This document shows positions 1,273 to 64,000 of a stretch of 64,000 nt of DNA, one piece after another. The notes under the pieces are model-generated. The model did not search any database and had not been told where the DNA came from. It worked only from the letters and a program-made list of their open reading frames with translations. A program made the position numbers and the translations under genes. The stretch is from Podarcis cretensis (Eukaryota), in NCBI GenBank assembly GCA_951804945.1, contig OX638161.1, forward strand, positions 49,414,001-49,478,000, written 5' to 3'. Position 1 is the first letter of the stretch; each line of letters begins with the position of its first letter.

Positions 1273-1448
1273 TCTCTTGCTCCAGCATCCAGCCTTACAT
1301 TAATGCCTTACTTTGGGTGGTGCCTGACTCTGCCAATAAAGGAAAACAACACACTTATCTTCAGCGTCAGCAGAATTCGAGTGCCTCAGCAAGCTAGTAG
1401 AGACAACCAATACAGACTATACAGACTCCAAAGTCTTTTCTACAAAAT

Positions 1449-3202: not shown

Positions 3203-3564
3203 GAAAGCCCCCTTCCCCCCATATATCCTTCTTATTGAATATTGTTCCTGATTCACCTGCACCAAGTTTGCAGGGAGGTTAGATTGTATCTGGTCTTCAC
3301 TGAGCATTCATTCTGATTTGTTTGTGTGGAAATTATACAATAATTTGCATTCATTCTGATTTGGAATGGATGAGAAATTTGACACAGCTTTTATTTGAGC
3401 ACAAATATATGAAATCCCCTCTTTCTGAAGCAATAGGAGAACCAAAGTTCATGGAATTATCCTAATTTTGATGCAGTTCTCCAACAAATGACCCTAAAAT
3501 ATACATATTAGCAGAAATGGGTATAAAAATGAAAACAGTATTTGAAAACAACCCACACAAATTC

Positions 3565-18816: not shown

Positions 18817-20112
18817 TTAATTATTTCTCTTTCTTAGTTGCTCCCTGTTGTTCAGCTCAGGTCTCAGTACAATGATGTAGCATTTAGGAGAAAAAATGCA
18901 AACCAATAACCCACCACTGGAGGCCAAGATGGAGAAAATCTCCACAGCCACCATGTCCTTTCCTCTTGAACTCAGGTAGGTTGGAACAAAGGACAACCAA
19001 ACACTACAAAATGCCATCATGCTGAAGGTAATGAACTTGGCTTCATTAAAGCTATCTGGTAACTTGCGAGCTAGGAATGCCACAGTGAAGCTGGCAATGG
19101 CCAAGAGGCCCATGTAACCCAAGACAGTATAAAACATGGCAACTGACCCTTCATTACATTGCAGAATGATCTCTTCTGTTACCGAGTGCATGTCTAAATC
19201 AGGGTATGGGGGAGAGGTTGCCAACCACACAGCACAAATACCTGCTTGAATAAGAGAGCAGGAAAGGACAATGGAGTTGGTCAGTCTTTTCGTCACCCAT
19301 TTCTTCATCCTAGATCCAGGCTTTGTAGCTAGAAATGCCAGAGAAACAATGGTGGTCTTTGCCAACACGCAAGAAACAGCCACTGAGAAGATGATTCCAA
19401 AAGTTGTTTGTCGAAGAAAGCAGGTCACTTTCCCAGGTTGTCCGAGGAATAAGAATGAAGAGAGGAAGCAGAGCAGGAGGGAGACAAGGAGAGTGTAGGT
19501 GAGGTCCCTGTTGTTGGCTTTGACAATGGGGGTATCTTTGTGCTTAACAAAGATTCCTAACACCAAGGCTGTGATCAGGAAAAAGGAAACAGCAACCGAG
19601 GCTAAACTGATCCCTAATGGCTCGTCGTAAGAGAGAAAGCTTGTAGTTTTGGAGATGCATCCATTTTTCCCTTCATTTGGAAATTGTTCTTCTGCACATT
19701 TGAAACAGTCACCCATGTCTGAAAAATAGAAGAAATGCAAGTGTCACAAACTGTTCCCCACTCCATATGCAAGTTGTAGTTCATGCTGATTTCTGCCTGC
19801 ATGTGTCAAGTGTGTAGATATATGAATGTGAAAATGAATGCTCTGAACATTCAAAGAAAGCTGCTATAAAAGGAAGGCCTCTCCAGGAATAGACAAGTCA
19901 TCTTACATAACTCACGTAACTCTCTTTTGATGGAAAAACTGGAGTACTATAGAAGCATACCTGTCTTGTTGGAAATCTTCCCTTCTGGGCATGGAACACA
20001 ATCGTAACAGCAAAATTTTTCCCCTTCCTTCCTTTTCTTCTGATTGCCAGTGCTCATTACACAAAGAAATGGGGAGTACCTAGCCATAATAATGAATGGA
20101 GTTACAATGAGA

Positions 20113-46400: not shown

Positions 46401-48741
46401 GCCCCTGTGTAAGGGACTCAGGTGGCGCTGTGGGTTAAACCACTGAGCCTAGGACTTGCCGATCAGAAGGTCAGCGGTTCGAATCCCCGCAACGGGTGAG
46501 CTCCTGTTGTTCGGTCCCTGCTCCTGCCAACCTAGCAGTTCGAAAGCACGTCAAAGTGCAAGTAGATAAATAGGTACTGCTCTGGCGGGAAGGTAAACGG
46601 TGTTTCTGTGTGCTGCTCTGGTTCGCCAGAAGCGGCTTAGTCATGCTGGCCACATGACCCGGAAGCTGTCTGCGGACAAATGCCAGCTCCCTCGGCCTAT
46701 AGAGCAAGATGGGCGCGCAACCCCAGAGCCGGTGACAACTTTCTATGCCCCTATGTTAGCCAAGCAATAGATGGCAAAAAACAATATCATATTCTGGGAA
46801 GCATTAGCAAGAGATGGGTGAATGTATGCATGAATGAATGAATGAATGAATGTGTAATGTTCCATTTAAGTTCATTATTCCATGTCAACAGTTTGTTTGC
46901 TTATTTACTTATTTTGTATGTCAGCTTATGAGCAACAAAATATTTCTTCTTTCTTCTACCCTAAATTCCACTGATGTGTACTGAAAGGTGCCACCCCTTT
47001 CTGTGTGTAGTAACTCTTGCCACCCTGGTTATCAGAAGAAAAAGAGGGAAAAGGAGAAATTTTGCTGCTATGATTGTGTTCCATGCCCAGAAGGGAAGAT
47101 TTCAAACCAGAAGGGTAGGTGATGTATTGCAATTATGCTCTCACTTAATTTTCGTTAAAGCAGCAAATAATAATTTGCCCCTGCAACAATAATGAAGAAA
47201 CGAGACATGGAGTAATGGGCAACTTAATTCACCGACAAGATCTGTAATAAGCACAGGAATGCTAGGCTCCAATCATTCCTGACCTTGGCTATTCTAGCCA
47301 GACTGATGGGAAGTGTAGACCAAAGGCTTCTGGAAGGCACTATCCATAATGTAAGCAGTCTTCTGCAGGAACCTTCAAAACATAAAGAAGGTGTTCAGCA
47401 GACAACATTGCACACAACCTTAATCGGAAAACCCGGACGTATGGCAAGTTGGGCTCTTTTTATTAAAAAATCAGAGTAAAGCCCCAAAATGAAAAAAGCT
47501 CAACAGCAATATAACAATCCTATATATACAGGCAGCAGTTAGATGATAATGTATGTGAGCAGCAGCTTCCATCTTGCTTCCACACATAAAGTTTATTTTA
47601 TTTATGTCTTAAATATTTTTATATTCCACCATTCCTCTCTTCTGGAACATAGGGTAGCTGACAACCCAGAATCAATAAAACAACCATGCAAAAGAAGAAA
47701 CTATTAAATCAGAACACTACAATAAAATACAGTAAAATAACAGTGATAATTATCTGTAGTAACAAACTCCGAAGCCAAAATGTACTCCTCATCAGATGTG
47801 AATTCCTATTGAAATGAACCTTTCTTCTTCTTTTTCCAGACAGGATTAACTGTGTGAACTGCCCAGATTATCAGTATCCAAGCAACAACCAAGATCATTG
47901 CATCCCCAAAACAATCAGCTATCTTTCTTATGAAGAACCTTTAGGGATCAGTTTAACGTCAGTCACTGTTTCTTTTTCCCTGATCACAGCTTTGGCACTA
48001 ATAACTTTTATTAAGCATAGAGATACCCCCATAGTCAAAGCCAACAATAGGGACCTCACCTATGCTCTCCTCATATCCCTTCTGCTCTGCTTCCTCTCTT
48101 CTTTGCTCTTCCTTGGCCAACCTGGGAAAGTGACCTGCCTTCTCCGACAACCCACTTTTGGCATCATTTTCTCGGTGGCTGTTTCTTGTGTCTTGGCCAA
48201 AACCATTACAGTGGTTGTTGCTTTCATGGCCACCAGGCCGGGGTCCAGCATGAGGAAGTGGGTAGGAAAAAGATTGACCAACTCCATTGTCCTTTTCTGC
48301 TCTTGGATTCAAGCAGGCATCTGTGCCATGTGGCTGTCAACCACTCCCTCCTTTCCAGATTTGGACATGCAGTCACTGACTCAAGAGATCATATCAAAAT
48401 GTAATGAAGGCTCTGTCACCATGTTTTATCTTGTCCTGGGCTACATGGGACTTCTAGCCATCATCAGCTTCACTGTGGCATTCCTGGCTAGGAAACTGCC
48501 AGACACTTTTAATGAAGCCAAGTTCATCACCTTCAGCATGTTGATGTTTTGCAGTGTTTGGTTGTCGTTTGTTCCCACCTACCTGAGCACGAAGGGGAAA
48601 TATATGGTGGCTGTGGAGATCTTCTCCATCTTGGCCTCTAGTGCTGGTTTGTTGGGTTGTATTTTTTATCCAAAATGTTACATTATTTTGCTGAGGCCTG
48701 AGCTGAACAGCAAAGAACAGCTAATGAGGAGACAAAGTTAA
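40497..48741 (+). CDS. V2R gene E, intact (881 aa; alternative ATG at 40533). Exons 40497-40747, 42034-42325, 42903-43748, 45245-45472, 46988-47114, 47840-48741
   Basis: Exon sizes 251/292/846/228/127/902 = 2646 nt, GT-AG sites, compatible phases; VFT, Cys-rich and 7TM motifs ([11 protein letters not shown]). Confidence 0.92.
41471..41814 (+). mobile_element. Sauria SINE
   Basis: Head and (ACCTTT)n tail; 13-bp TSD TATATATTACATT (41458-41470, 41815-41827). Confidence 0.88.
43950..45000 (+). mobile_element. Degraded L2-like LINE fragments in gene E intron 3
   Basis: Remnant RT motifs [14 protein letters not shown] (~44045) and YQYADDT (~44262); [20 protein letters not shown] (~44895). Confidence 0.6.
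46413..46735 (+). mobile_element. Sauria SINE, 3'-truncated
   Basis: Head and body match the other copies; flanked by an imperfect repeat CAACTT(C/T)CTATGCCCCT. Confidence 0.85.
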
Positions 48742-48844
48742 GAACTATGCTGCAGTTCCCTTCACAATTTCTTGGGGTAACTCTTCTGGAACACAACAAA
48801 GCTTTTTTTCTGAGTAGACATTTGACTGCACTTTAGCTGTCATG

Positions 48845-49440
48845 TTAGAATCCTAGAAGTGTAGAGTTGGAAGTCCACTCAAAGTCCATTCCTCTGCAAT
48901 ACAGGAATCTCAGCTAAAGCATCCATGACAGATGGCCATCCAACCTCTGCTTAAAAACCTCCAAAGAAGGAGATTCCGCAGCCTCCTGAGGGAGTCATTT
49001 CACAGTCAAACTGCTCTTACTGTCAGAAAATTCTTCCTAAGGTTTAATTGTAATCTCCTTTCTTATAACTTGACGCCATTGGCTCAAGTCCTACCCTCCA
49101 GAGCAAGAGAAAACACCCTCGCCCCATTTTATGCCCTTTTAAAATGTGGGGTTTGGGGAGGGTTGGGTTGTTTTTATTTTGATTATGTATTTTGTAGTTT
49201 TATGTTTTGATTTTATTCTGTGAACCACTTTGAGACCTCTGGGTATAGGGTGGTATACAAATCCAAGAAATAATAAAATAATCTTCCATATGGCAGCCCT
49301 TTATATAAGTGCAGATAGCTATAATATCTCCTCCTAGTCTGTTCTTTTCCAGGCTAAGCATACTCAGCTCCCTCAAACATTCCTCTTAAGGCTTGGTTTC
49401 CAGATCATCTTGGTCATTCCACTCCACACACGTTGCAGGC
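48845..49440 (-). mobile_element. CR1-like LINE 3' region, antisense, interrupted
   Basis: TAGAATCCTAGAAGTGTAGAGTTGGAAG is the reverse CR1 terminus, followed by typical antisense CR1 sequence. Confidence 0.6.
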
Positions 49441-49630
49441 AGCTTCTCAAATTTGTCTGCTCCATTCACATAATGCTTGAGTACATTATCCTGCAAGAGA
49501 GTCACACTGCTCACTTATCCCAGAATGAAGACATTAGAGAAATAGAATTATTATTATTATTACCTGTGTAATACCATGCAGGAACCATGAATGTATGAAG
49601 CAATTGCTTTCCTGAAATTAAGATAAATTA

Positions 49631-49953
49631 CCACAGAGCCTAGGGCTTGCTGATCAGAAGTTTGGCGGTTCAAATCCCCATGACGGGGTGAGCTCCTGTT
49701 GCTCGGTCCCAACTCCTGCCAACCTAGCAGTTTGAAAACATGAAGTGCAAGTAGATAATTAGGTACCACTCCAGCGGGAAGGTAAACGGCGTTTCCGTGC
49801 ACTGCTCTGGTTCGCCAGAAGCGGCTTAGTCAGGCTGGCCACATGACCCGGAAGCTATATGCCAGCTTCCTCGACCAGTAAAGTGAGATGAGCGTCGCAA
49901 CCCCAGAGTCGTCCATGACTGGACCTAACAGTCAGGGGTCCCTTTACCTTTAC
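49631..49953 (+). mobile_element. Sauria SINE, 5'-truncated
   Basis: Body matches the 41471 copy; (ACCTTT)n tail. Confidence 0.85.
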
Positions 49954-50657
49954 TTACTACAGCATTTTACAGCAATACATGCAGCTGAACTACACACAGT
50001 CTTTCCTATCCTAAGTAAATAAATGTTAAGCTAAGATTACAAGTTTCTGGGTCGTGTCCAATACTAATCCACTCAGAGCAGAGCTGTTGATATTAATAGA
50101 TATGACTAACTTAGGGTTATTGATTTCAGTGGGTCTACTCTGAGTAGAACTAACTTTAGATGCAAACATTGTTCATCTCTCTGGTAGTATCTATCTAGTT
50201 CTTAAAAAAAAAAAAAAACCCATAGACTCATGTGTTTTTGTATGGAGGTGTATCACTGTGGCTTCCAGAATAACAAAGAAAAAAGCATGTTCTGAAGAAC
50301 AGTGAAGACGGAGGCAGCAGCAGCATCCATGACTGGAGAAAACCCAGGGTGTTCTAAAGGTTCTTTTGTTAGTTCTTTGTGATATTCTTTGGAATGCTGC
50401 TCTAAACCACTGCTAACTGCCACTGCCTGGGGGATACATACCATCTCTTGGGTGCAAAGACTGCATTCAGGTCAGTTTCACAAAGATGGAGCTGATTTCC
50501 CTCATCAATCACTTTTCCCTTTTGGACTGCTACCTCAACTTGGACACTACTCTAGCCCTGGCTCTGTTCATCAGCCTCTTCCAAATGATCGAATGTAGCA
50601 CTTTTGCATAGTACAAGAGACTTGACCAAGCATAGAGAAGCATCTTGTCCTTTTCAG

Positions 50658-50740
50658 TCAAACCTGAAGTCACTGAGAATCCCCACTCCCTGGAGGAACA
50701 GCTGGGCAGTTGGTTCCCCTCTGAGACTGGCACACCGATG
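50658..50740 (+). CDS. Candidate small upstream exon of the SPATA31-like gene (coding, or 5' UTR ending in ATG)
   Basis: Acceptor TTGTCCTTTTCAG, donor ATG|GTGAGT, open frame KPEVTENPHSLEEQLGSWFPSETGTPM ending in phase 0. Confidence 0.4.
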
Positions 50741-51462
50741 GTGAGTTTCAGTATCCCCTTTGTTCATGTCTGGATTTGATTCAGGCCCCTCCCCACCACC
50801 ACCACATTTGGTTTTCTCAACTTACAACAGCAATATGTACTTACAAATTTATTTAAGAGATTTCCTACCTTTCCTTCAGCACAAAGATTCCCAGGGCAGG
50901 TTACAGCCATATAATCAAATAATAGCAAAATCCAAAATAAAACAATTATATGACAGTACAGATGATCTCACAGATATGGCGCACTTCTCAACTGTCAAAC
51001 ACAAGGCTCAGAAAATCAGCATTCATGGGGATGGTTTTCCATGCTTTAGGGAAGAAAGCACCAGTGTGGTGCCATGATCATAATGAGAATGGCATTTTAA
51101 CAGTCTTGAGTCTTGCATTTACACAAACTTCAATATTGAATGAACTTCTAAGTGAGATGGGAGGAGTCAAAAATGACCTGACAGTATTGCATGCTTTGGC
51201 CACCAGGAAACAGGAATGCAAGAAGTAGCCTTATACAGATCCAGACTGTTGGTCCATCCAGTTTAGTACTGTCAAAGCAGACCAGTGGCAGCTCTCCAGG
51301 GTTTCAGACTGGGATTTTTCTCAGTCCTATTTAGAGATATCAGGGATGGAACTTGGAACATGCCTCATTCTGCCTGATGGCATAGTACCCTGTTTGGTAA
51401 GGTGGTATTTCCAATTGGTTGTTCTTCCCGTTGAATAACTTCACTGCCTCCTCTCTTCCTAG

Positions 51463-51514
51463 AAGGATCATGTGGAACACAGAAGCCATCTCCAAGCAGC
51501 TGTTGCAAAAGAAG
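51463..51514 (+). CDS. Candidate 52-nt exon of the SPATA31-like gene
   Basis: Acceptor CTCCTCTCTTCCTAG, donor AAG|GTAAGC. Reads KDHVEHRSHLQAAVAKE-G, phase 0 to phase 1, matching the phase-1 acceptor at 53183. Confidence 0.5.
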
Positions 51515-51990
51515 GTAAGCCATTGAGATAGGAACCAGCTCATCCTGGTGATTTGAGAGAGAGAGACAGAGAGCATAAAAACTACTGCTGACATTTGATA
51601 ATTCAGATGGTCTTTTCTTAGCATCTATGAAAGTGTACATACACACCCTTGTCATTTGTTGCTTGGGTTTCTTTAATAAGATAACTGCAAGATAATAAAA
51701 CCCAAATTAAAAATCTTAAAAAAACAACCTTATTTAAAACTGAAATACACCCGGGGAACTCGTAGAGGATCATCTAACAAAAGTACTTAGAGTTGAGTTA
51801 GTAAATGCAATCTAGAAGTTGGCTTTCAGTGCCCATTACCCCTGACCATTGGACATGCTTGCTAGGGTTCATGGGCACTGGAGTCCAACAACATTTGGAA
51901 GGCCACTGCTGCTCTGAAATAAAATCAGTGCCTCTTGGGTCTCCAAATTGGTATATATGTATTCTAATACTTCTAATAAATATATAAATG

Positions 51991-53098
51991 TGTCACGAGT
52001 GCTGACAGGGAAGTATCAGGCCCCTGCAGGTCAAAAAGAGACAAGTCTTCCCTGCTTGATTCCTTCAGCTTGAGAAATTGCAGGAAACTAAGCTTCGGAT
52101 CTGCCTTTCCCCTCTACAGCTCTTCCCAACAGATGGGGACTGCAATGTGGCAGTGAGCTCCTCCTCTGCTTCTGCCAGACTCATTGCTCGACAACATGTA
52201 GGACACTCCAAGAGGGGGTGTGAGAGGAGGAGAACCAGCAAGACTGGAATTGTCCTGCTGTGGAATGGTCAGTGTACCCTCCATCCCTTCTCGCCTCCCC
52301 TCTTTCTCATTTTGCTTTGAATGTGCTTTATTTCTTTATTTCTAAATTTCATCTTCACATTTCACAAATATTTTCAACAGGAACAAAAACAAACCCTTTA
52401 CAAATCCAATGTACTTTCCCTTTGACTTCCTTCCCCTCCTTTCTAGTTTTATTTATTTTTATTACTGCATATCCAATTCATATCTATTTACTAATTTCCC
52501 CTTATGTTCTCCCTAGCTTTCTCTTACTGCACTTGCTTATGTCAGTCCTGATAATTTTTTGATTTCTTTACAATGTATCTTCAGATGGTCAATAATTCCC
52601 CCCAATCCATTTTAAAAAGTCTTTATTCTGGGTTTCTTGTTTTTCTGGTAAGTTTCACCATGTCTGTGTACTCCATTAGTTTTAATTGCCAACCTTCCTT
52701 TGTTAGAACTGTTTCTTCCTTCCATTTTTGGGCATAAATTATGGAAGGGCCTTCTTCCTCTGACCTGCTCCCTCCCTTGATTACTCCACCCTCCTGCTTC
52801 TAGCACCTCCCACCACCAGGACCCAGGGTCTAAGTCCTCGTCTTCTCTGTTTTCCCTGGGGAGCTCCTGGGTGGGAGGCTCCTGCCACCAGTGGCGGAAC
52901 TTCATGCTCTGGCACCGGTGGGTGGAGAGCAGGCAGGAGCAGGGGCAGGGCGGGTGCGTGTTCTGGGGGTGCCCAGCGCAGGCAGGGGGCAGCTGCAATG
53001 GCGCCCTACTGGGATTGCGCTGACAGGGGTGGTGCCCCCCGCACACCTCTTCCTCCGCCAGTGCCTGCCACTCCTCCTCATCCAGCCAGTTCCTGACA
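51991..53098. mobile_element. Possible LTR-like repeat (TGTCA...TGACA) with a GC-rich end and an AT-rich internal insertion
   Basis: Short inverted termini and an abrupt GC-rich block at ~52760-53098; no clean TSD found. Confidence 0.3.
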
Positions 53099-53182
53099 AA
53101 ATATAATTGTCTCTATACCAATTGGTTCCATATCATCCTGGAGGTGAAGGAAAGGTCACCAGTGCCTTCATTTGTCTTACAG

Positions 53183-56100
53183 GTACCAAACACCAGGAGA
53201 TAGACCCACAAAATGGAGGCAGTTGCCATTCCTCCATCCGCAGATTGCTATGTGACAACGTGACCTGTGCCATATGTGACAGGGCAGCCAAGGAGGCTGA
53301 GGAAGTGTTGCGTGTCTATGCATCAAAACCTGGGCTTCCTGCTTTGCAAATGCCATCACTTCCCGTTGCCTCTTATGTGGGGAGCTCCAGCCTACCAGCC
53401 ATTTCTGCTCAAAGAGATGACACAATTTTTCCATGGAGCAGCAGTAAACCTGCCACAAACTGTGGCCATCCAGAATTGGGCCCAGAAACAACACCTTCAT
53501 CCAGAAAGGAGCAACACATTCCCAAAGGCAAGAGGCAGAAGGAGAAGCCACTCCATTCTGCTCAGCAAGATGTTCCCATCTCCAGGGAGAATGACATAAG
53601 TCCCAGTTGTTCTGACAGCCATTCCATGTTTGGTATAAATGAATGTTATGACAGCTCTGAGGACAGCAGTGGGGAAATGAGTGATCCCTTTTGCTTCTCT
53701 TCTAGCACATCATCAGAGCTGTCTTTCAATAGTTGGGAAGATTACAGTCCCCTTTCTGACCTGTCCGAGTTATCAAATTTCAGCAAAAAGAGCCACATGC
53801 CTTTGAGGCAAAAGAAAAATGAAGGGTCCTCTCTGAATGAGAGGAAGAACCACCAGGGCATGAGATTCCACCATACAGGAACAAGGCATTTCCCCAGTTC
53901 TTTATCTGTGATCTCCCAAGCAAATATCAAGTCTCCTAGGATTGAATTTGCTACTGAGGACACTCCCTTTGTGGCTAAGGCTGTGAGAAAGACTTTGGAG
54001 TGGCATTTGGTTGTGAAAAGTATTCAACACAAATTGGGTCTTCCATCAGTCGTCCTCAGGTCATTCAGGGCATTTTTGCCTCTTGGTATGGATTTCACTT
54101 GCCCGTACCGTCCAAAGAGGGAGCTTACTGTGTTGATGAGGCCTCGGCTTCTTCCTTTCATGAGTGGGGCAAAGAGGAGGACACTAGAGAAACACATGAA
54201 AAAAATGATTCACATGCAATGTCGGGTGTTGCCAAAGCAAGTCCAAGAGGCCCTCAAGCACATGAAGCTAGATTATCCCCTCACCACAGATATAGCATCA
54301 TCTGCACACAGGAAAGGAGGCCGAGGAGGAGTCGTCAAGGGTGAGAGGGAAGGGAAACTTCATAGGCATGTTCTACATTTGGAATCCACAGCCAGGGAAA
54401 CAGCCCTCAAATCTCCCCCTCCTTCCAAAGCAAACCCCCAGACTACAACTGAGAAGAAGTCCTTTGAGGCCAGACATGAGATGCCACTTCGGTCGCAGTA
54501 CACTGTTGCGTTTGCCCAAGCAAGGACAAGTTTTCTTCCTGCTAATGAGGAGCAGTGTTTGGATTCTCATGTGCTTAAAAAGAAGGTGCAGCACCCATGG
54601 GACCAGCCCATACTGATACAAGAGATCCCATTCATTGAGCAGAGGACTTGGGAGGATCTGGAATGGCACGTGATAAAAAAGAGGTTGCAGCATGCTTGGG
54701 GGTTGCCGAGCCTTGTCCAGAGATCTCTCCATTCTGTTTTCCCAGTTGTCCCCCAATCACAGCAGCACCGGACATTGCAGCACATGGAGGTGAGTGTTCT
54801 TCTGGCTGAGCTCTCCTTCCTTAGTGATGCCATTATCCAAGAACTAGAGCAGAATCTGCTGAAAAGAATCATGCTTCACCGATGGCACTTACCCCCAAGG
54901 GTCCTTGAGTCCCTCAGGCTACTTTCCCCAGAGATGGTGACTGTTGCAGGGAAACAGGATGGAACTAGGATAGGGAGGAGGACAATGCCAAGTCAGCCTT
55001 TGGTGTACCCCACACTTCAGCCTGAAGCAACAGAGAATAAGATATTCCACTTGGATGAAAAATGGCTGGACGTTTCCTCAACCTTGGCCATGAGTGCAAT
55101 GAAGCCCAAACTGCTGCCTACGTTTCCTAGAGCTAGAGATGTTGCTGTTGAGTTCTTAGAAGTGAGGACAGAGTTTCTCTATGCTCAGGTCAGAGAGAAT
55201 CTGGAACTGCACATTAGAAAAAAGAAGCTACAACATGAATGGGGCTTGCCTAGTCTTATTCAGAAATCCTTGCATGGCTTCAAGTCACAGGCTCCCCCAC
55301 TGCCCAGTCTCCAAAGGACGAAAGCCCATGTCTACATTCTACTACAGAAACCATCATTCCTTCCCCAAAGCACCTACAGTCAGTTGGATTTTCACATTCA
55401 AAGGATGAAGCTACAACGACAATGGAAGTTGCCTAAGAGGGTTTTGGAATCTATCAAGCTTTTCCGCCCTGTGTTTGGGACAGGTTCCTTGGAACCACAA
55501 ATTGCAGAGTACCAAAATAAAAGCTGTGACTCTCTGGGCAGATTCTCCTCTCCCATCCCAGTAGCCAGAGAAGAGCTGGTAGAGGCAAGGCAGGCAACAT
55601 TTGTGGGTGAGAACATCTTCACACATGGACCCAAGGCTTACAGGGCACAGCAAATGGTCCGCCCACACCAGGATATGGAGGCAGGAGAAGTCCCTGAGGG
55701 AGCTTTTTCTGAATCATCAGCTGCCTCTACAGATCACCCTAGCCTCAGGAGAAAGTCCACAGAATCTGATCTTCAACCCATGGGAAGCTTCAAGATCCCA
55801 CTTGAAGACTCTTTCCAGAAGTTTGCCCCTTTTTATAGCCAAGTGAAGCCCAGAAGCACATTTCTGCCCTTTCTGGAGGGTGAAGCAGTGGGTAAGGGGG
55901 AGTTGAACATCAGGAACGAGTTTCCAGAGCACCAACCTAGTCAACAGAGTGAAATCTTGAATAGGAAAGATGCCATAGCCAGGGCAGCAGTGGAAGACCG
56001 CTACTTCTACTGCCCTTGCTATTGGATAACATACAAGCACCCAGGATTGAGTACTGTACACCAAGAAGTAAGTGACAGAAAAACATTTGGGTTGATGCCT

Positions 56101-59100
56101 GCCTCCCCACAGTCAACTCAAGTTCTTTCTATGCTGAGGCCCCATAGTTTGGACAAGATGAACCACCACTTGGCCAAGAAGCACAGGGAGATGCAGTTGA
56201 GAGATATTCCGAATGTTGCCACCTCATATTCAACAAGGGAACATTTCACTTTCTTGGGGGAGTTGCCCAGCATGCACTTGGAACCTTTGGCTACAGTGTT
56301 CCAGGAAAGATGCTCCCCATCCCAAATCAGCCAAGTGAAGATTAGGGTCCAGGAGCTGGAGCCCCCAATATTCCAGAATGAAGCAAGGGAGTTGCTTAGG
56401 ACTAGATCCCCACAGCCGATGTTTGCAGACACTGCACACAAACCCTCTTCAGAGACATCAGTGACCCCTGCTTCAAATATAAGACTTCCTAAATATTCAA
56501 ATATGAATCTTTTGGATGCCCATCTCAAGAAAAAAAATATGGAGGCTAAATTCCAATTGACGGAAGTATCCCAGGAGCCAGTGCCAACATTTCTCACAAA
56601 GGAAGCCTGCGATCTTCTGGAACTTCACATACAGCGCAAAAGACTCCAGCATGAGTGGGGGCTGCCATCTCTTGTGCAGAAATCTTTGCATGCCTTTGTC
56701 CCCCTTCCACCTGAGCTACAGAGGAGTAAAAAAGCAGGAGCGTCAACACATGTCACTGTTGAGAAACTGGGATATCAAGAAAAAGCGACTGCCCATGTAC
56801 CACAATCTGTGTTAGAGGCCATCCCCCCTCAAAAGGCCCTGTATGTTGTAAGTCCAGATGTCAAGAATGGCCTGGAAGCTCATGTGAGGAGCTGGGCCAT
56901 GGAGCACCAGTGGGGACTTCCCAAACTGATTCAGGATTCTCTGAGGGCAATTGCTCCCACTCAACTTGAGTCCCATTTCAAAGAAGAAAAGCATCATACA
57001 CAGCTCTCAGAAGATCATCGTAAGTCCTACGAGCAAGATGAAATCCCTACTTTTTCTGAGGGAAGAGATCCTTTGAAGCTGCTCACACCTGAAGCAGGAG
57101 CCAGAGGTCATCCAAAAGCTACTATCCACCAAGGAATGGCAACCACAGGCATAGGTGTGGAACTGACTGCATTTGTATCATCTGAGGTGAAGCCACCTTT
57201 GCTCACAGAGGAAGCTTGGAATCTTCTGGAATTCCACATTGGAAAGAAGAAAATCCAGCACATATGGGGTCTTCCCTCCACTGTCCAGAAGTCCTTATGT
57301 GCCTTTGCCCTATTTCCCCCTGATCCAGAGAACCATCGGGGAGAAAACATAACAAATATTCACCCCTGGGATTGGGTAGAAGTGAAAACGATAATCAATA
57401 AGCTTACGTTCATCAGCTCGGATATGAAGGAGAGACTAGAGGCTCACATGAGGAATATAACCACAAAGCACAAATGGGAAATACCAAAGCGGGTACAGGA
57501 ATCACTGAGGGCATTTAAACGGCCGAGATCACTTCCTCAATATGATCCGTTATCTTGTCAATACAAATCTTCCCAGGGGCATACTAATGGTTCCCAGACT
57601 GACGATGACAATGAACACTCATCAGAAGAAGCCAAGAGAAGGGTAAAAGGAAAGCAAGAGAGGACAGGAACTGTACCATCAAACTTTAAATTAACTTTCT
57701 TAAGCCCTGAGGTGAACCTAAATTTTCTCACAAGGGTCACCCAGGACCTGTTGGAATTCCACATCCAGCATAAGAAGATCCAGCATGCATGGGGCCTACC
57801 ATCCTCTGTGTTGAGGTCATTGAAGGCCTTTGGCCCATTCCCCCTTGAGATACAGAAACAGATGCAATACACAGGAAGGAACATGACAACGGCAACCCAG
57901 TGCAATGGGATGGAGGTACAAGTTATTATCCCAAGTCTCTCCTTCCTGAGTCCCAACACAAAAGAGCTCCTGGAAGCTCACATGAGGAAGAGGGTGGTAC
58001 AGCACAGGTGGGGCCTTCCAAAGCGGGTTCAGCAATCACTGGGAGGACTTCTCCGTCACAGACAACCTTTCGGATCTCGACAGGACAATGTGCGTCCTTA
58101 CCCGAGCAAATTCTTCCAAGTCCCTACAGCTGATTCCCAGACTGAAGATGACAATGAAGACTTGGTGAAGGAGGAAATGGGCAACAGAAGGACAGCAGGG
58201 AAGAGATGGGGCTTTCCTAAAGGAAAGCAGGAAGCAACCAGAGCTGTGAACTTTGAAGAAACAACTTTCTTATGCGCTGGGGCGAAGCTTGCCTTCCTCA
58301 CAGATGAAGTGCAAGATCTTCTGGAGTTCCATATCCGACAGAAGAAACTCCAGCACACATGGGGCCTACCCTCCTCTGTGCTGAAGTCCATGCATGCCTT
58401 TGCCCCATTTCTCCATGGGTCTCAGACGCATGTGCAAAGCTTAGACAAGAGAATGACTAAAGCAAACCAATGGGTTAAGGTAGAAGTGAAAGAGATTGTC
58501 TGGGATCTCTTCTTCCCAAGTCCAGACACAAAAGATCGCCTGGAAGCTCATGAGAGGAGGAGGGTGGTTAAGCACAGATGGGGCCTTCCAATGCGGGTTC
58601 AGCAATCACTGGGAGTATTTCTAAATCCCAGACATGCTTTAGGATTGGAATCGGAGAATGCACAGTATTTTTCTCCTCACTACAAATCCTCCCAGGTGGC
58701 TAGAGATTCCTCTGAAATAGAAGGTGACAATGAAGACATGAAAGAATTCAAAGTCAAGAGAAGGACAACAGGGAGAATGGAGGTCTTCAATCAATTGAAA
58801 CAGGGAGCAGACTCAACTATGAACATGAATGTAACTGCTGGAGTGAAACTTGGTTTCTTAACCAATGAGACCTGGGAATTTCTCGAATTTCACATCCTGC
58901 GCAAAAAACTCCACCATACTTGGGGCCTACCCTCCAATGTGCTGAAGTCCCTGCATGCCTTTGCTCCATTTCACCTTGAGACAGAGAAACACAAGCAAAG
59001 CATGACCATGAGATACCCATGGGAGATAGAAGAAGCCCATAGTATTTCAAGGAGTCTTACGTTCCTCAGCCAAGACTTACAGGAGAACCTGGATGCCCAT

Positions 59101-62100
59101 GTGAGGAGGATGACTACACACCATAGGTGGCACCTTCCAGAACATGTTTCACAATCATTGAGGGCATTTCGGCATCTCAGACCCTTTTCCAATTGTGAGT
59201 TGGGTGAAGCAAGGTCTCTAACACCTTTTCATGGCAAATTTCTCCAAGAGCATAATGTTGATTCCCAGACTGAAAATGAAAATGAAGTCTTGGTGGAGGA
59301 GGAAATGGGAAACAGAAGAACAGCAGGAAAGGGATGGGTTGTTCCCCAAGGGAAGGAGGGAGTAACAGTACAATCAAACCTTAAAGTAACTGCTTTATCA
59401 AGCCTTGAGGTGAACCTAAATTTTCTCACAAGGGTCACACAGGACCTGTTGGAATTCCACATCCAGCATAAGAAGATCCAGCATGCATGGGGCCTACCAT
59501 CCTCTGTGTTGAGGTCATTGAAGGCCTTTGGCCCATTCCCCCTTGAGATACAGAAGCAGATGCAACACAAAAGAAGGAACATGACAACGGCAACCCAATG
59601 CAATGGGATGCAGGTACAAGTAATTATCCCAAGTCTCTCCTTCCTGAGTCCCAACACAAAAGAGCTCCTGGAAGCTCACATGAGGAAGAGGGTGGTACAG
59701 CACAGGTGGGGCCTTCCAAAGCGGGTTCAGCAATCACTGGGAGTATTTCTGCTTCCCAGACAACCTTTCGGATCTCGACAGGATAAGGTGCAGCCTTTCC
59801 TGGGCAAATTCTTCCAAGTCCCTACAGCTGATTCCCAGACTGAAGATGACAATGAAGACATGGTGAAGGAGGAAATGGGCAACAGAATGACAGCAGGGAA
59901 AGGATGGGGCTTTCCTAAAGGAAAGCAGGAAGCAACCAGAGCTGTGAACTTTGAAGAAACTACTTTCTTATGGCCTGGGGCAAAGCTTGCCTTCCTCCCA
60001 GATGAAGCACAAGATCTTCTGGAATTCCATATCCGACAGAAGAAACTCCAGCACACATGGGGCCTACCCTCCTCTGTGCTGAAGTCCATGCATGCCTTTG
60101 CCCCATTTCTCCATGGGTCTCAGACGCATGTGCAAAGCTTAGACAAGAGAATGACTAAAGCAAACCAATGGGTTAAGGTAGAAGTGAAAGAGATTGTCTG
60201 GGATCTCTTCTTCCCAAGTCCAGACACAAAAGATCGCCTGGAAGCTCATGAGAGGAGGAGGGTGGTTAAGCACAGATGGGGCCTTCCAATGCGGGTTCAG
60301 CAATCACTGGGAGTATTTCTAAATCCCAGACATGCTTTAGGATTGGAATCGGAGAATGCACAGTATTTTTCTCCTCACTACAAATCCTCCCAGGTGGCTA
60401 GAGATTCCTCTGAAATAGAAGGTGACAATGAAGACATGAAAGAATTAAAAGTCAAGGGAAGGACAACAGGGAAAATGGAGGTCTTCAATCAATTGAAACA
60501 GGGAGCAGACTCAACTATGAACATGAATGTAACTGCTGGAGTGAAACTTGGTTTCTTAACCAATGAGACCTGGGAATTTCTCGAATTTCACATCCTGCGC
60601 AAAAAACTCCACCATACTTGGGGCCTACCCTCCAATGTGCTGAAGTCCCTGCATGCCTTTGCTCCATTTCACCTTGAGACAGAGAAACACAAGCAAAGCA
60701 TGACCATGAGATACCCATGGGAGATAGAAGAAGCCCATATTATTTCAAGGAGTCTCACATTCCTCAGTCAAGACTTACAGGAGAACCTGGATGCCCATGT
60801 GAGGAGAATAACTACACACCATAGGTGGCACCTTCCAGAACATGTTTCACAATCACTGAGGGCATTTCGGCATCTCAGACCCTTTTCCCAATGTGAGTTG
60901 GGTGAAGCAAGGTCTCTAACACCTTTTCATGGCAAATTTCTCCAAGAACCTGTAGTTGATTCCCATTCAGAAGATGACAAGGAAGACTTGGTGGAGGAGG
61001 AAATGGGAAACAGAAGGACAGCAGGGAAGGGAAAGCAGGGAGCAACCACAACTGTGAACTTTGAAGAAACCTATTTCTTATGGCCTGGAGTGAAGCTTGC
61101 CTTCCTCACAGATGAAGTGCAAGATCTTCTGGAATTCCATATCCGACAGAAGAAACTCCAGCACACATGGGGCCTACCCTCCTCTGTGCTGAAGTCCATG
61201 CATGCCTTTGCCCCATTTCTCCATGGGTCTCAGACGCATGTGCAAAGCTTAGACAAGAGAATGACTAAGGCACACCAATGGGATAAGGTAGAAGTGAAAG
61301 AGATCGTCTGGGATCGCTTCTTCCCAAGTCCAGACACAAAAGATCGCCTGGAAGCTCATGAGAGGAGGAGGGTGGTTAAGCACAGATGGGGCCTTCCAAT
61401 GCGGGTTCAGCAATCACTGGGAGTATTTCTAAATCCCAGACATGCTTTAGGATTGGAATTGGAGAATGCACAGTATTTTTCTCCTCACTACAAATCCTCC
61501 CAGGTGGCTAGAGATTCCTCTGAAACAGAAGGTGACAATGAAGACATGAAGAACTCCATGGTCAAAAGAAGGACAATAAGGAATATGGAGGTCTTCAACC
61601 AATTGAAACAGGGAGCAGACTCATCAATGAACTTGAATGTAACTGCTTTCTTGTGGCCTGGAGTGAAACTTGGTTTCTTAACCAATGAGACCTGGGAATT
61701 TCTCGAATTTCACATCCTGCGCAAAAAACTCCACCATACTTGGGGCCTACCCTCCAATGTGCTGAAGTCCTTGCATGCCTTTGCTCCATTTCATCTTGAG
61801 ACAGAGAAACACAAGCAAAGCATGACCATGAGATACCCATGGGAGACAGAAGAAGCCCATATTATTTCAAGGAGTCTTACGTTCCTCAGCCAAGAGTTAC
61901 AGGAGAACCTGGATGCCCATGTGAGGAGGATGACTACACACCATAGGTGGCACCTTCCAGAACATGTTTCACAATCACTGAGGGCATTTCGGAATCCCAG
62001 AGCATTTTCCCAATGTGAGTTGGGTGAAGCAAGGTCTCTAACACCTTTTCATCGCAAATTCTCCCAAGAGCCTGAAGCTGATTCCCATTCAGAAGATGAC

Positions 62101-64000
62101 AAGGAAGACTTGCTAGAAGATGCCAAGGTAAGAAAAAAGGCAGTAGAGAAACTGGAGAGGAGGCTCAATTATGTTCAAAAGGCAGCAGCTACACCTGTAT
62201 TGGCTCAAGCGACTACTTTCTTATTGCCTGAGGTGACTCTTCCTTTCCTCACGGATGAGGCCCAGAACCTTCTGGAATCACACATTCAGCACAAGAAACT
62301 CCATCATGCATGGGGCTTACCTTCCTCTGTGTTGAAGTCCCTGCATGCTTTTGCTCCATTTCTCATTGAATCAGAGAAGCACCCACCATACATGGAAGGA
62401 GAGAATATAGCCAACGGAGTTTCATGGGACAGAGGGGAAGTATACATTATTACTCCCACTCTCTCATTCCTCAGTCCAGACATAACAGAGTGTCTAGATG
62501 CTCATGTTACGAGTATGACTGCAAAGCATAGATGGGGGCTTCCAAAACATGCTCAAAATATGCTTAGAGCATTTCTACTTCCTGTGCCATCTTCTCAGTT
62601 TGGGGAAATCAGGCCTCAAACTCATCACCACAGCTCTACATTTTATCAAGACCCTTCTACCCAACTTCTGGGGGAGAGTGAGGAGGAGAGACTTCTGGCA
62701 AGAACCTCATCTATTACCCATTTTATAGACTGTGTGACAGAGTTGCCTTTCCTCACTAATGGTGCTCAAGATGTTCTGGAAGTCCACATCCAGCACAAGA
62801 AGATCCAGCATCAGTGGGGCTTGCCAGCCATTATTCAGAAATCAGTGCGTGCATTTGCTCCACCCCCCTTGGAGCCACAGGAGAGCCCCCAACCTTCAGT
62901 GGGAGTGAGCACTGATGGAAGGAGACAAAAGAACTTTATTGATGAATGGAGAGCTGATGCCAAGGAATGGCCTGGGGCAAAGGAGGTTCCTGCTTCTTCC
63001 CAGCACTCGCATTTCTTACACTCAAGATCAAACGAACACCAGGAAAAACACATCAAGAACCTCAACATAGAGCACCAGTGGCACCTCCCTAAACTGGCTC
63101 AGAAGTCAACGAGGGCCTTTATCCCAGAAGCTGATGAAATGGAGGAAGAGGAGGAGCCTTTGACTTATTCTGGCGCTCAGGCCCTCCAAGTGCCAAACAC
63201 TCCTTTTCAAACAGGAGCAGAAAAGGAAGCCAGCTCAGGGTCAGAAGATCAACCCACATACACCTCAGAGCTGTTTTGGAAAATACAGCATAGGATGGTT
63301 TCCTGGCCTGATACCGAAAAGGATACTGGATCTCTCTATCCTCTTACAAAAGTTCAGCATTTCACAGTAATCCAAGGGACAAGCAGCAGCTCAGAGGGTG
63401 AAAGAGAAGCACCGCAAGTGAGTGCACTGCAGATATTTACACTGAATCTACATCATGCTGCACAGTATCCACAAATTCCTGGCAAGACAGAGGAGTCTTG
63501 TGAGATATTCAACTGTCCCTGCTCATGCCATTCATCAACATCCACAAAAGGCTCAGCTTCATCGTTACAATTAGTTGCAGAGCAAAGGCAAGAGCAGCAA
63601 GAAAATTCCCAGGAAAATGGAAAGGAGACAGAGGCAGGGTCCTTTTCTCAGATATCAGATAATAATGGGCCCCAGGACTCTGATTCTTTCCCAGGAGAAA
63701 GTGGAAAAGATCCTTCCATTTCAAAGGAAGCCGAGGTGGATTTTTCTGTTCAGACATCAGCTAATATTGAATGTCAGGACTCTGATTCATCCTCAGGAGA
63801 CAGAGATAAGAATACTTCCCTCTCAAAGGAAGGCAAGGCTGACTCCTCTTGGATATCATTGAATAGTGAACTCCAGATTCATTCTTCATCCTCAGGAGAT
63901 AATAAAGATCCTTCCCTCTCACAAGAGGCAGAGGCAGATGCCACTCCACAGATATCACATAATATTGAATCCCAAATCTCTGGTTCATCCTTAGGTGAAA
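53183..64000 (+). CDS. Giant exon of a SPATA31/FAM205-like repeat protein (at least 3,605 codons; runs off the window)
   Basis: I read frame +1 codon by codon: TAA at 53104-53106, then no stop to 63999. Acceptor TTTGTCTTACAG at 53182. N-terminal IRRLLCDNVTCAICDRAAKEAEEVL resembles the SPATA31/FAM205 RxLLCxDxxCxxC motif. Repeated LExHIxxKxxQHxWGLPxxVxxSL resembles the FAM75-domain motif. Confidence 0.88.
57700..62110 (+). repeat. Coding higher-order tandem repeat A-B-C-A-B-C-B-C of ~550-575 bp modules
   Basis: LEFH anchors at 57751(A), 58321(B), 58882(C), 59449(A), 60019(B), 60580(C), 61129(B), 61702(C). Period 1698 bp, then 1110/1122 bp. Confidence 0.92.
63625..64000 (+). repeat. Second coding repeat, acidic Ser-rich units of ~32-34 aa
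   Basis: EAGSFSQISDNNGPQDSDSFPGESGKDPSISKE / AEVDFSVQTSANIECQDSDSSSGDRDKNTSLSKE / GKADSSWISLNSELQIHSSSSGDNKDPSLSQE / AEADATPQISHNIESQISGSSLGE. Confidence 0.8.

What the first reader, a model, noticed from the sequence alone, without database searches (positions are those of the whole stretch)
53107..64000. Hidden >10.8-kb single-exon ORF: a giant reptilian SPATA31/FAM205-like protein next to a V2R cluster
Seen: frame +1 is open from 53107 to the window end (~3,630 codons), and the ORF track omits it because no stop is reached. It starts after a plausible acceptor (53182) with RRLLCDNVTCAICDRAA. It then carries about 15 pairs of two alternating motifs: alpha FL-x5-6-LExHIxxKxxQHxWGLPSxVxxSLxAF and beta LxFLS-x5-LEAHxRxxxxxHRWxLPxxVQxSL. 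Alpha anchors are near 53995, 54658, 55201, 56617, 57226, 57751, 58321, 58882, 59449, 60019, 60580, 61129, 61702, 62272 and 62776. Established: mammalian SPATA31/FAM205 genes are testis-expressed, have small 5' exons plus one large last exon, and carry the RxLLCxxxxCxxC motif and only a few HxWGLP motifs. Inference: this is a squamate member with a massively amplified WGLP module, which suggests the paired motif is an autonomous repeat domain forming a large sperm or germline scaffold.
Basis: partly seen in the sequence, partly recalled or inferred. Interest (0 to 1): 0.85.

Follow-up and report, generated by a model that had tools for sequence, protein, structure and literature searches.

The report
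Giant lizard SPATA31-family repeat gene
This is the huge last exon of a real wall-lizard gene of the sperm-associated SPATA31/FAM205 family, built from about 30 copies of one 40-residue helical motif; such giant arrays occur in many non-mammalian vertebrates, not only in lizards.

Summary
Frame +1 is open from 53107 to the window end (3,631 codons, 0 stops against 186 and 192 in the other forward frames). It carries the RxLLCx4Cx2C motif and 15 alpha/beta module pairs at the coordinates given. The family call also holds: Pfam FAM75 E=1e-145 in 16 stretches, and every module passes the cutoff alone. The gene is already predicted in Podarcis raffonei (XP_053218866.1, 4,365 aa, "uncharacterized") and is collinear with this ORF. 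A three-exon model (ATG 50738-50740; 51463-51514; 53183 onward) reproduces that N-terminus.

Three corrections:
- Alpha and beta are homologous copies of one ~40-residue unit (hhalign E=2.7e-18).
- AlphaFold2 predicts helix, G-L-P break, helix, with no confident alpha-beta packing (pTM 0.30), so an autonomous paired domain is not supported.
- Long arrays are not squamate-specific: shark, skate, ray, coelacanth, sturgeon, amphibians and a pigeon have 11-56 matched stretches, and mammalian FAM205A has 2-4.

Motif cores are constrained and linkers drift. Distal units were amplified separately in each lineage, and unit number differs between Podarcis species. This paralog lacks the N-terminal membrane helix of its relatives. 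I call it a new variant of a known family, of moderate interest.

The parts
50738..50740 (+). Proposed start codon at the end of exon 1, followed directly by the donor GTGAGT (50741-50746)
   Evidence: This is the only ATG|GTRAG site in 48742-51462. Joining it to exon 2 and exon 3 gives MKDHVEHRSHLQAAVAKEGTKHQE..., which matches the N-terminus of both P. raffonei isoforms. Inferred; no RNA evidence.
51463..51514 (+). Exon 2, 52 nt, 17 codons plus 1 base. The acceptor is a polypyrimidine tract plus TAG ending at 51462, and the donor is G|GTAAGC at 51514/51515.
   Evidence: tblastn of ortholog residues 2-18 maps to 51463-51513 at 88% identity. Splice sites were read. A similar segment is coding in the Hemicordylus relative P0003.
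53183..64000 (+). Giant exon 3, open to the window end. The ortholog continues about 726 residues further.
   Evidence: It forms a single collinear alignment with P0001 residues 20-3639.
53239..53289 (+). RxLLC-x4-C-x2-C motif (RRLLCDNVTCAICDRAA), the only part that matches Pfam DUF4599 (profile positions 42-68)
   Evidence: 19 bits, below the cutoff of 34. The motif is conserved in squamate relatives and in other family members.
53923..56979 (+). Old proximal modules M1-M4 (53923-54288, 54589-54951, 55132-55491, 56548-56979). They include an extra degenerate alpha-like unit at about 54544-54621 and a 352-residue gap (55492-56547) with no Pfam match.
   Evidence: Module coordinates are. Each tested module passes the FAM75 cutoff. 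In the module tree m1-m4 group with the same-numbered modules of other squamates.
57157..62601 (+). Young distal array M5-M14, with a unit period of about 187-191 residues (alpha, about 73 residues, beta, about 114 residues)
   Evidence: In the module tree these units cluster with each other and with the Podarcis orthologs, not with the distal units of anole, gecko or snakes.
57650..59346 (+). Higher-order repeat copy 1 (units A-B-C = M6-M8)
   Evidence: On the 1,698-nt diagonal, 150-nt windows from 57700 to 59050 are 92-100% identical to copy 2.
59347..61026 (+). Higher-order repeat copy 2 (units A-B-C = M9-M11)
61027..62150 (+). Partial higher-order repeat copy 3 (units B-C = M12-M13)
   Evidence: Diagonals at offsets 1110/1122 and 2808/2820 are 90-99% identical.
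62707..63147 (+). Terminal module M15, positionally orthologous to the last module of paralogs (P. muralis SPATA31F1, P. lilfordi, gecko)
63148..64000 (+). Acidic, Ser/Thr-rich tail (net charge -10 per 100 residues) with short acidic repeats. It has no Pfam match and is cut by the window end.

Best explanation
WHAT IT IS. The stretch is the third and very large coding exon of a lacertid (Podarcis-type) gene of the SPATA31/FAM205 (Pfam FAM75) family. It is the ortholog of P. raffonei LOC128400584. The full protein is about 4,360 residues, of which the window holds about 3,606.

ARCHITECTURE.
- The protein starts with a short N-terminus carrying the family's RxLLC-x4-C-x2-C motif. It lacks the membrane helix that its paralogs have.
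- Then come about 30-32 copies of one ~40-residue unit: P-F-L-x7-L-E-x-H-x3-K-x3-H-x-W-G-L-P-x2-V-x2-S-L-x2-F-x-P.
- These units form 15 alpha/beta pairs separated by acidic, Ser/Thr-rich linkers. An acidic tail follows.
- Each unit is predicted to be a 20-residue helix, a break at G-L-P, and a 10-residue helix. The spacers look disordered.

HOW IT EVOLVES (shown).
- The first four pairs are old and positionally conserved among squamates.
- The distal ten were generated recently by tandem duplication of one-pair and three-pair blocks, presumably by unequal crossing-over.
- Some copies are homogenised within species, and unit number differs between Podarcis species.
- Selection keeps the frame open and protects the motif cores (omega about 0.35), while linkers drift (omega about 0.9).

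HOW IT WORKS (inferred, not shown). By analogy with mouse SPATA31 (binds beta-actin and syntaxin 1; knockout infertile) and FAM205A (acrosomal; knockout infertile), the protein is most likely a spermatid protein. Its helix-kink-helix units would be multivalent docking sites for one repeated partner, so unit number would set the valency. Because it has no membrane anchor, it would act as a soluble or peripheral scaffold rather than a membrane-tethered one.

My confidence is about 0.9 for identity and architecture, and about 0.35 for the spermatid multivalent-scaffold mechanism.
For: OPEN FRAME. 0 stops against 186 and 192 in the other forward frames; P about 1e-83.

FAMILY. FAM75 E=1e-145 in 16 stretches, and each module tested alone scores 30-68 bits against a cutoff of 24, always on profile positions about 140-240.

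ORTHOLOG. P0001 (XP_053218866.1) is collinear, 92.5% identical, and has the same 15 modules. All of the roughly 11 indels are in frame, P about 6e-6 under neutrality.

GENE MODEL. The splice sites and the only ATG|GTRAG site upstream reproduce the ortholog's N-terminus.

REPEAT UNIT. Alpha against beta gives hhalign probability 99%, E=2.7e-18; the reversed control gives 0.089. Across 1,445 instances the key residues are 80-97% conserved.

STRUCTURE. AlphaFold2 predicts helices 18-37/41-50 and 80-99/103-112 with block pLDDT of 82-93, but pTM of 0.30 (the shallower run is).

CONSTRAINT. Against the ortholog, cores diverge 4.6% and the rest of the array 10.1%, p=1.5e-8. In the young duplicates, non-synonymous changes hit 2.9% of core codons against 12.6% of other codons, p=2.6e-7, while synonymous changes are 2.4% against 3.9%, not significant. 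Pooled dN/dS is 0.57.

DYNAMICS. The module tree is. B1-B2 identity is 96-97% within a species and 90-92% between species at the same position, and P. muralis has two fewer units.

NO MEMBRANE HELIX. No hydrophobic segment is found here or in the ortholog, while paralogs, dog FAM205A, and the coelacanth and skate proteins have one.

FAMILY FUNCTION. PMC13423385 and PMC5338094.
Against:
- The start codon and exon 1 are inferred only, and the 3' end lies outside the window.
- The partner of the unit is unknown. Nothing maps the actin or syntaxin binding of mouse SPATA31 onto the FAM75 core, and no solved structure or named family outside FAM75 resembles the unit.
- Loss of the membrane helix and the Arg/Ser-rich end of the ortholog's tail could mean a different cellular location from the acrosomal relatives.
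- The ortholog is itself an automatic gene prediction, not an experimentally confirmed protein.
Confidence: 0.8

Rival explanations
1. The alpha/beta pair is an autonomous folded repeat domain. Alpha and beta hairpins would pack into a small helical bundle, and the protein would be a string of about 15 such domains.
For: Alpha and beta alternate strictly in the distal array, with constant spacing of about 69-74 residues. The Pfam FAM75 core (positions about 140-240) covers one alpha plus one beta. Four helices are predicted per pair.
Against: Alpha and beta are homologous copies of one unit. The alpha-beta spacer is poorly conserved, varies from 61 to 88 residues, and is predicted with low confidence. 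pTM is 0.28-0.30 in both runs, so no packing is predicted with confidence. Shark, skate, coelacanth and sturgeon arrays use triplets, and the proximal parts of squamate arrays contain 'abaab' groups. Foldseek finds no similar solved fold. A missing prediction is not proof that no fold exists.
Confidence: 0.15
2. The protein is not an acrosomal or spermatid scaffold. It would be a soluble nuclear or RNA-associated protein, or act in another tissue, having lost the family's membrane anchor and gained an Arg/Ser-rich C-terminal tail.
For: There is no hydrophobic segment in this gene or its ortholog, unlike the paralogs. The ortholog's last ~130 residues are rich in Arg/Ser repeats. Motif cores are basic and His-rich. 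Bekpen et al. report nuclear localisation signals in SPATA31 proteins and a broader expression pattern for the primate members.
Against: Every family member that has been studied functionally acts in spermatids and the acrosome. There are no expression data either way. The tail lies outside the window and is known only from an automatic gene model.
Confidence: 0.2
3. The ORF is a recently dead or non-functional gene, or the near-identical internal repeats are an assembly artefact that inflates its length.
For: Linkers evolve almost neutrally (omega about 0.9). Repeat copies are 94-100% identical, which is hard to assemble. The P. muralis model begins at an internal Met and has fewer units. A possible relic of a membrane-helix exon with two stops lies at 50486-50668.
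Against: 3,605 codons without a stop has P about 1e-83. An independent assembly of another species has the same 15 modules in the same order, with only in-frame indels. Non-synonymous changes avoid the motif cores in the youngest duplicates, while synonymous changes do not. Comparable giant open genes are predicted across vertebrates.
Confidence: 0.04

Closest known systems
Podarcis raffonei LOC128400584 (XP_053218866.1 / XP_053218865.1, 'uncharacterized protein', 4,365 / 4,376 aa)
   Same: Ortholog. It is collinear over residues 26-3631 of the frame and 92.5% identical, with the same 15 modules, the same N-terminus and the same acceptor.
   Different: It comes from another species. There are eleven small in-frame indels, and units B1/B2 are homogenised separately in each species. 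It is an automatic prediction without a name or a described function.
Mammalian FAM205A / SPATA31F1 (acrosomal protein; the mouse Fam205a1 knockout is infertile)
   Same: It shares the Pfam FAM75 core, the Cys motif region (DUF4599) and the WGLP units. These are the only mammalian proteins returned by the N-terminal 1,266-residue query (E about 5e-11).
   Different: It is 1,270-1,360 aa with 1-2 near-full modules (2-4 partial hits), against 15 here. It carries full DUF4599, and an N-terminal hydrophobic helix was seen in the dog protein. In the module-1 tree the lizard gene falls in a squamate paralog clade other than the one named SPATA31F1.
Mouse SPATA31 (VAD1.3/AEP1) and primate SPATA31A/C
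   Same: They share the FAM75 domain, a large last coding exon, and fast evolution with motif duplication.
   Different: PhyRepID reports 2-6 motif units in the human paralogs and 1 in mouse. The primate copies gained other predicted domains and broader expression. None of these proteins was compared directly here.
Giant FAM75 arrays of non-tetrapods: catshark LOC119977343 (5,132 aa), skate LOC129698430 (4,631 aa), coelacanth LOC106703202 (4,716 aa)
   Same: They contain the same ~40-residue unit in 29-37 copies. Pfam FAM75 gives 11-15 stretches, with E of 1e-128 to 1e-146 for skate and coelacanth. Their sizes are comparable.
   Different: Units are grouped in threes (spacing about 62, 64, 145-170 residues) rather than in pairs. 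My strict RxLLC pattern finds no match in them. The coelacanth and skate proteins have a hydrophobic N-terminal segment.
Rapidly evolving motif-repeat scaffolds such as KNL1 (an analogy for how it may work, not a relative)
   Same: It is an interspersed short-motif array in a long, largely disordered protein, with lineage-specific gain and loss of units, as the PhyRepID study describes for KNL1 and SPATA31.
   Different: There is no sequence relationship. The partner of the WGLP unit is unknown.

Membership tests
SPATA31/FAM205 family (Pfam PF14650 FAM75) | Match to the FAM75 profile above Pfam's gathering score | tested here: met
   The whole ORF scores 486.5 bits, E=1e-145, against a cutoff of 24, in 16 stretches. 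Nine separately tested modules each score 30-68 bits. Only profile positions about 137-261 of 382 are matched; the profile's first ~135 and last ~120 positions find nothing.
SPATA31/FAM205 family | N-terminal Cys motif region (Pfam PF15371 DUF4599; RxLLC-x4-C-x2-C) | tested here: inconclusive
   The motif itself is present at 53239-53289 and conserved among relatives. The DUF4599 profile reaches only 16.6-19 bits against a cutoff of 34, and only over positions 42-68 of 88.
SPATA31/FAM205 family | N-terminal hydrophobic (membrane) helix upstream of the Cys motif, as seen here in paralogs and in dog FAM205A | tested here: not met
   A Kyte-Doolittle scan (19-residue window, threshold 1.6) finds no segment in the ORF, in P0001 or in P0003, but finds one in P0004, P0006, P0007, P0008, P0010, P0011, P0045, P0053 and P0057. 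No such exon was found by tblastn. There is only an interrupted look-alike at 50513-50668. This feature is typical of the family rather than strictly defining.
SPATA31/FAM205 family | Gene structure: small 5' exons followed by one very large last coding exon | tested here: inconclusive
   Two small 5' exons and a giant exon of at least 10.8 kb are supported by the splice sites and the ortholog's model. Exon 4 is the last coding exon in mammals. The 3' end lies outside the window, and no RNA data were available.
SPATA31/FAM205 family | Testis or spermatid expression, acrosomal localisation | not testable with these tools
The family's role is known from mouse and human only.
SPATA31F (FAM205) subfamily specifically | Orthology to mammalian FAM205A/SPATA31F1 | tested here: inconclusive
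   The only mammalian proteins returned are FAM205A/SPATA31F1. In the module tree, module 1 of this gene groups with Hemicordylus P0003, Lerista P0011 and P. lilfordi P0013. The proteins named SPATA31F1/FAM205A in P. muralis and snakes form another group. No mammalian SPATA31A-E or H1 proteins were included.

The most novel reading that the evidence does not exclude
The ~40-residue P-F-L...L-E-x-H...W-G-L-P...S-L...F-x-P helix-kink-helix unit may be an ancient jawed-vertebrate repeat, and long arrays of 20 or more units may be the original state of the SPATA31/FAM205 family. The well-studied mammalian proteins would then be reduced remnants with 2-4 units. On this reading, unit number (valency) is a fast-evolving trait, changed by unequal crossing-over and gene conversion and possibly driven by sexual selection. 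The membrane-anchor-less Podarcis paralog would represent a soluble multivalent version of an acrosome-associated scaffold.
Probability: 0.35. Interest if true: 0.6.

Novelty: new variant of a known kind. Interest (0 to 1): 0.45.

Why it matters
SPATA31 and FAM205A are needed for male fertility in mice, and FAM205A is a proposed human infertility marker. The biochemical role of their shared FAM75 core is unknown.

This locus and its relatives show that the core is a short helix-kink-helix unit. It can be strung 30 to 50 times in one protein, it is conserved from sharks to lizards, and its copy number changes even between sister species.

That gives a concrete object to test: one unit against arrays of defined valency. 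It also gives a natural series of valencies for asking what the unit binds. It suggests that the mammalian proteins studied so far are the short end of the family.

For genome annotation, these giant exons are real. They are easily missed by ORF lists that require a stop codon, and easily truncated by gene predictors, as the P. muralis model appears to be.

Tried and rejected
TOOLS THAT WERE UNAVAILABLE
- The search of earlier findings returned nothing, by place or by words.

SEARCHES THAT FOUND NOTHING
- Tandem Repeats Finder found nothing because its period cap is 500. The repeat finder and diagonal scans found the repeats.
- tblastn of ten paralog N-termini against 48800-53300 found only the Cys motif, plus one interrupted hit to the Lerista N-terminus. 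No intact membrane-helix or DUF4599 exon was found.
- The PDB sequence search with the module profile gave 0 hits.
- Foldseek against PDB with the better model gave 0 hits. I did not run the wide structural search, because pTM of 0.30 makes the global geometry meaningless.
- The ESM Atlas search, leaving out FAM75 clusters, gave no usable hit.

RESULTS I SET ASIDE
- Minor Pfam hits (CoV_ExoN 27 bits, CEP152-bind, DUF5715, DUF1195, EPS8_2nd, DUF4727) lie inside repeat units and are treated as spurious.
- The GC-rich patch at 52800-53000 is not a CpG island (o/e 0.28).
- My first reading, that the window had lost the ortholog's start codon (TAG in place of ATG), was wrong. The TAG is the acceptor of exon 2, and the ATG sits at the end of exon 1.
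- A WH2-like or actin-binding reading of the unit, and a metal-binding reading of the conserved His residues, were considered. No tool result supports either.
- Searches failed on my own coordinate and size slips and were corrected.

NOT DONE
- The joined three-exon model was only translated in a local script for comparison with the ortholog.

Full report
OBSERVATION. Frame +1 is open from 53107 to the last base of the window: 10,893 nt, or 3,631 codons. The next longest forward open stretch in the 64 kb is 1,371 nt. Between 53183 and 63999 the frame has no stop codon, while the other two forward frames have 186 and 192 and the reverse frames 107-151. Base composition predicts about 190 stops, so the chance of none is about 1e-83. 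The ORF lister leaves it out because it runs off the window end. The translation shows RRLLCDNVTCAICDRAA at residues 45-61. The window has no N.

FAMILY. Pfam FAM75 (PF14650, the SPATA31/FAM205 family) matches at E=1e-145 and 486 bits, in 16 stretches. Nine modules tested on their own each pass the gathering score (30-68 bits against 24). They always match profile positions about 137-261 of 382. The 352-residue gap between modules 3 and 4 and the C-terminal 284 residues match nothing. DUF4599, the family's N-terminal domain, reaches only 17-19 bits (cutoff 34), and only over the Cys-motif part of the profile (positions 42-68). The family call is therefore right. What is repeated is the conserved core of the FAM75 domain.

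IT IS ALREADY PREDICTED ELSEWHERE. The best database hit is the P. raffonei 'uncharacterized protein LOC128400584' (P0001, XP_053218866.1, 4,365 aa). A P. muralis model is next (P0002, 3,668 aa). After that come 3,000-4,200 aa FAM75 proteins from cordylid, skink, gecko, anole and snakes, and 2,500-4,000 aa ones from a salamander. The ORF aligns with P0001 in one collinear block (ORF 26-3631 to P0001 20-3639). It is 92.5% identical, with about 11 small indels, all in frame. P0001 runs on for 726 more residues: an acidic stretch ending in an Arg/Ser-rich one. The window thus holds about five sixths of a protein of about 4,360 residues, from a lacertid close to, but not the same as, P. raffonei or P. 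muralis.

GENE MODEL.
- Residues 2-18 of both P. raffonei isoforms map to 51463-51513, and residue 20 onward maps to the big exon.
- In the window, 51463 is preceded by a polypyrimidine tract plus TAG, and 51514 is followed by GTAAGC.
- The big exon follows ...CTTACAG, with its AG at 53181-53182.
- The only ATG|GTRAG site in the 2.7 kb upstream is ATG 50738-50740 followed by GTGAGT.
- Joining ATG, 51463-51514 and 53183 onward gives MKDHVEHRSHLQAAVAKEGTKHQE..., which is the ortholog's N-terminus.

This is an inference from sequence. I translated the joined model only in a local script and sent it to no search tool; all searches were made by exon reference.

Neither this protein nor its ortholog has a hydrophobic segment. 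The paralogs named SPATA31F1/FAM205A, dog FAM205A, and the coelacanth and skate proteins do have an N-terminal one. An ATG-led hydrophobic ORF at 50486-50668 resembles the N-terminus of the Lerista relative (tblastn E=8e-5) but is cut by two stops. It may be a relic of a lost first exon.

THE REPEAT UNIT. Alpha and beta are homologous. Profile against profile gives probability 99% and E=2.7e-18 over all 40 columns, and a reversed control gives E=0.089. A combined profile finds 1,445 instances in the roughly 190 proteins collected. The consensus is P-F-L-x7-L-E-x-H-[VIL]-x2-K-x-[LI]-Q-H-x-W-G-L-P-x2-[VI]-Q-x-S-L-x2-F-x-P. F, L, E, H, W, G, L, P, S and the final P are each 80-97% conserved. The window ORF has 32 such units: 15 pairs plus two extras. 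Cores are basic (+6.5 per 100), His-rich (8%) and hydrophobic (35%). Linkers are acidic and Ser/Thr-rich.

STRUCTURE.
- With only the 15 window modules as alignment, AlphaFold2 gave mean pLDDT 57.5 and pTM 0.28.
- With module 2 and a more diverse alignment of 30 family sequences, it gave mean pLDDT 76.2, with the helix blocks at 82-93, but pTM 0.30.
- In both runs each unit is a 20-residue helix, a three-residue break at G-L-P, and a 10-residue helix. The alpha-beta spacer is predicted with low confidence, and the relative placement of alpha and beta is not predicted with confidence.
- There is no solved relative by sequence or by fold, and no named cluster outside FAM75 in the ESM Atlas.

The local helix-kink-helix is therefore well supported, and an autonomous alpha/beta domain is not.

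CONSTRAINT.
- Against the ortholog, unit cores differ at 4.6% of residues and the rest of the array at 10.1% (Fisher p=1.5e-8).
- Within the window, the young duplicates give dN/dS of 0.38-0.68, pooled 0.57 (p about 0.001, though the comparisons are not independent).
- Non-synonymous changes hit 2.9% of core codons against 12.6% of other codons (p=2.6e-7). Synonymous changes do not differ (2.4% against 3.9%, p=0.31).
- Roughly, omega is about 0.35 in the cores and about 0.9 in the linkers.
- Eleven of eleven indels between species are in frame (P about 6e-6).

The frame and the units are under selection, and the linkers are nearly free.

REPEAT DYNAMICS.
- DNA repeats show a unit period of about 560-570 nt, and a higher-order block A-B-C (about 57650-59346) repeated as A-B-C (59347-61026) and B-C (61027 to about 62150). 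Copies are 94-100% identical.
- In a tree of 153 modules, modules 1-4 group with the same-numbered modules of other squamates, and mammalian module 1 lies next to the squamate module-1 group.
- Distal modules cluster by lineage (anole, gecko, snakes, Podarcis), which means separate recent amplification in each.
- Units B1 and B2 are 96.3% identical in this species and 97.4% in P. raffonei, but only 90-92% identical between species at the same position. That indicates homogenisation or parallel duplication.
- The P. muralis model has two fewer units, in the order A-A-B-C-B-C.

HOW WIDE THE ARCHITECTURE IS. A profile of the 15 modules, run against 1.84 billion representative proteins, finds only 301 proteins at E<=0.001. 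Those with the most matched stretches are not squamate:

| Protein source | Length (aa) | Matched stretches |
|---|---|---|
| Sturgeon (record flagged as possible contamination) | 5,126 | 56 |
| Catshark | 5,132 | 32 |
| Coelacanth | 4,716 | 30 |
| Skate | 4,631 | 29 |
| Electric ray | 3,764 | 22 |
| Gecko | 3,563 | 22 |
| Pigeon | 4,132 | 20 |
| Elephant shark | 2,405 | 16 |
| Coelacanth 'FAM205A-like' | 1,308 | 16 |
| Axolotl | 2,445 | 12 |
| Caecilian | 2,373 | 11 |

The coelacanth and skate proteins are multi-FAM75 by Pfam (15 and 11 stretches, E=1e-146 and 1e-128). In these fishes the unit comes in threes (spacing about 62, 64 and 145-170 residues), while the distal squamate arrays use pairs. 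Unit count rises with protein length across the family (Spearman 0.75). The median is 3 units below 1,600 aa and about 20 above 2,500 aa. Named mammalian FAM205A proteins have 1-2 near-full modules. Amplification relative to mammals is real, but it is a general non-mammalian feature of the family.

FUNCTION. [quoted passage not shown] FAM205A is acrosomal, antibodies to it inhibit the acrosome reaction, and Fam205a1 knockout mice are infertile with defective acrosomes (PMC13423385). PhyRepID noted fast motif-repeat evolution in SPATA31, with 2-6 units in human and 1 in mouse. I found no paper on the non-mammalian giants or on the WGLP unit. The most likely role here is a spermatid scaffold whose units are repeated docking sites for one partner, with valency set by unit number. 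Since it lacks a membrane anchor, it would be soluble or peripheral. This is inference. A nuclear or other role cannot be excluded.

Expression, ortholog DNA, synteny and read-level support for the repeat copy number were therefore not tested. The exon's 3' end is outside the window.

VERDICT. It is a new variant of a known kind and is already present as unnamed gene predictions. Interest is moderate.

Noticed in passing
window 5264-48738: There is a cluster of at least four vomeronasal type-2 receptor genes. The 7tm_3 exons are at 5264-6163(-), 18820-19740(-), 27639-28562(-) and 47854-48738(+). The ANF_receptor exons are at 8264-9151(-), 21554-22387(-), 30764-31645(-) and 42819-43826(+). The nearest gene ends about 2 kb upstream of the proposed exon 1 of the SPATA31-like gene, on the same strand.
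   Followed up: partly
window 9939-11258 (+) and about 44000-44400 (+): These are retroelement fragments. One is an ORF with endonuclease/exonuclease/phosphatase and endonuclease-reverse transcriptase matches. The others are short ORFs with reverse-transcriptase-like motifs, including a YADD box, inside the V2R gene region.
   Followed up: partly
window 50486-50668 (+): An ATG-led hydrophobic ORF resembles the membrane-helix-like N-terminus of the Lerista relative P0011 (tblastn E=8e-5) but is interrupted by two stop codons. It may be a relic of a lost membrane-anchor exon of this paralog.
   Followed up: partly
window 52800-53000: A GC-rich patch (GC 0.67 against a window mean of 0.42) lies in intron 2, just upstream of the giant exon. 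Its CpG observed/expected ratio is only 0.28, so it is not a CpG island. Its nature is unexplained.
   Followed up: partly
window 58357-58557 (ORF residues 1751-1817, repeat unit B): Pfam CoV_ExoN (coronavirus exoribonuclease) nominally exceeds its cutoff (27 against 25 bits, E=2e-6, 2 stretches) inside a repeat unit. I take it as a false positive inflated by the repeated copies.
   Followed up: no
window about 63700-64000 (ORF residues about 3540-3631): A second, unrelated repeat of acidic Ser-rich segments of about 33 residues (…SSSGD..KDPS.S.EAE.D…) is cut by the window end. The ortholog's tail continues with acidic stretches and ends in Arg/Ser-rich repeats.
   Followed up: no
window 55492-56547 (ORF residues 796-1147): The long gap between modules 3 and 4 has no Pfam match. 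It contains degenerate unit-like remnants near residues about 1015-1040 and about 1135-1150, which suggests decayed modules.
   Followed up: no
P0002 (P. muralis XP_077773940.1) and P0046 (Acipenser sinensis MGH0183739.1): The P. muralis model starts at an internal Met that corresponds to residue about 363 of the window's open frame, so it is probably truncated at the 5' end. The sturgeon protein is a perfectly periodic 56-unit array in a record flagged UNVERIFIED_CONTAM on a 73-kb contig, so its length should be treated with caution.
   Followed up: no
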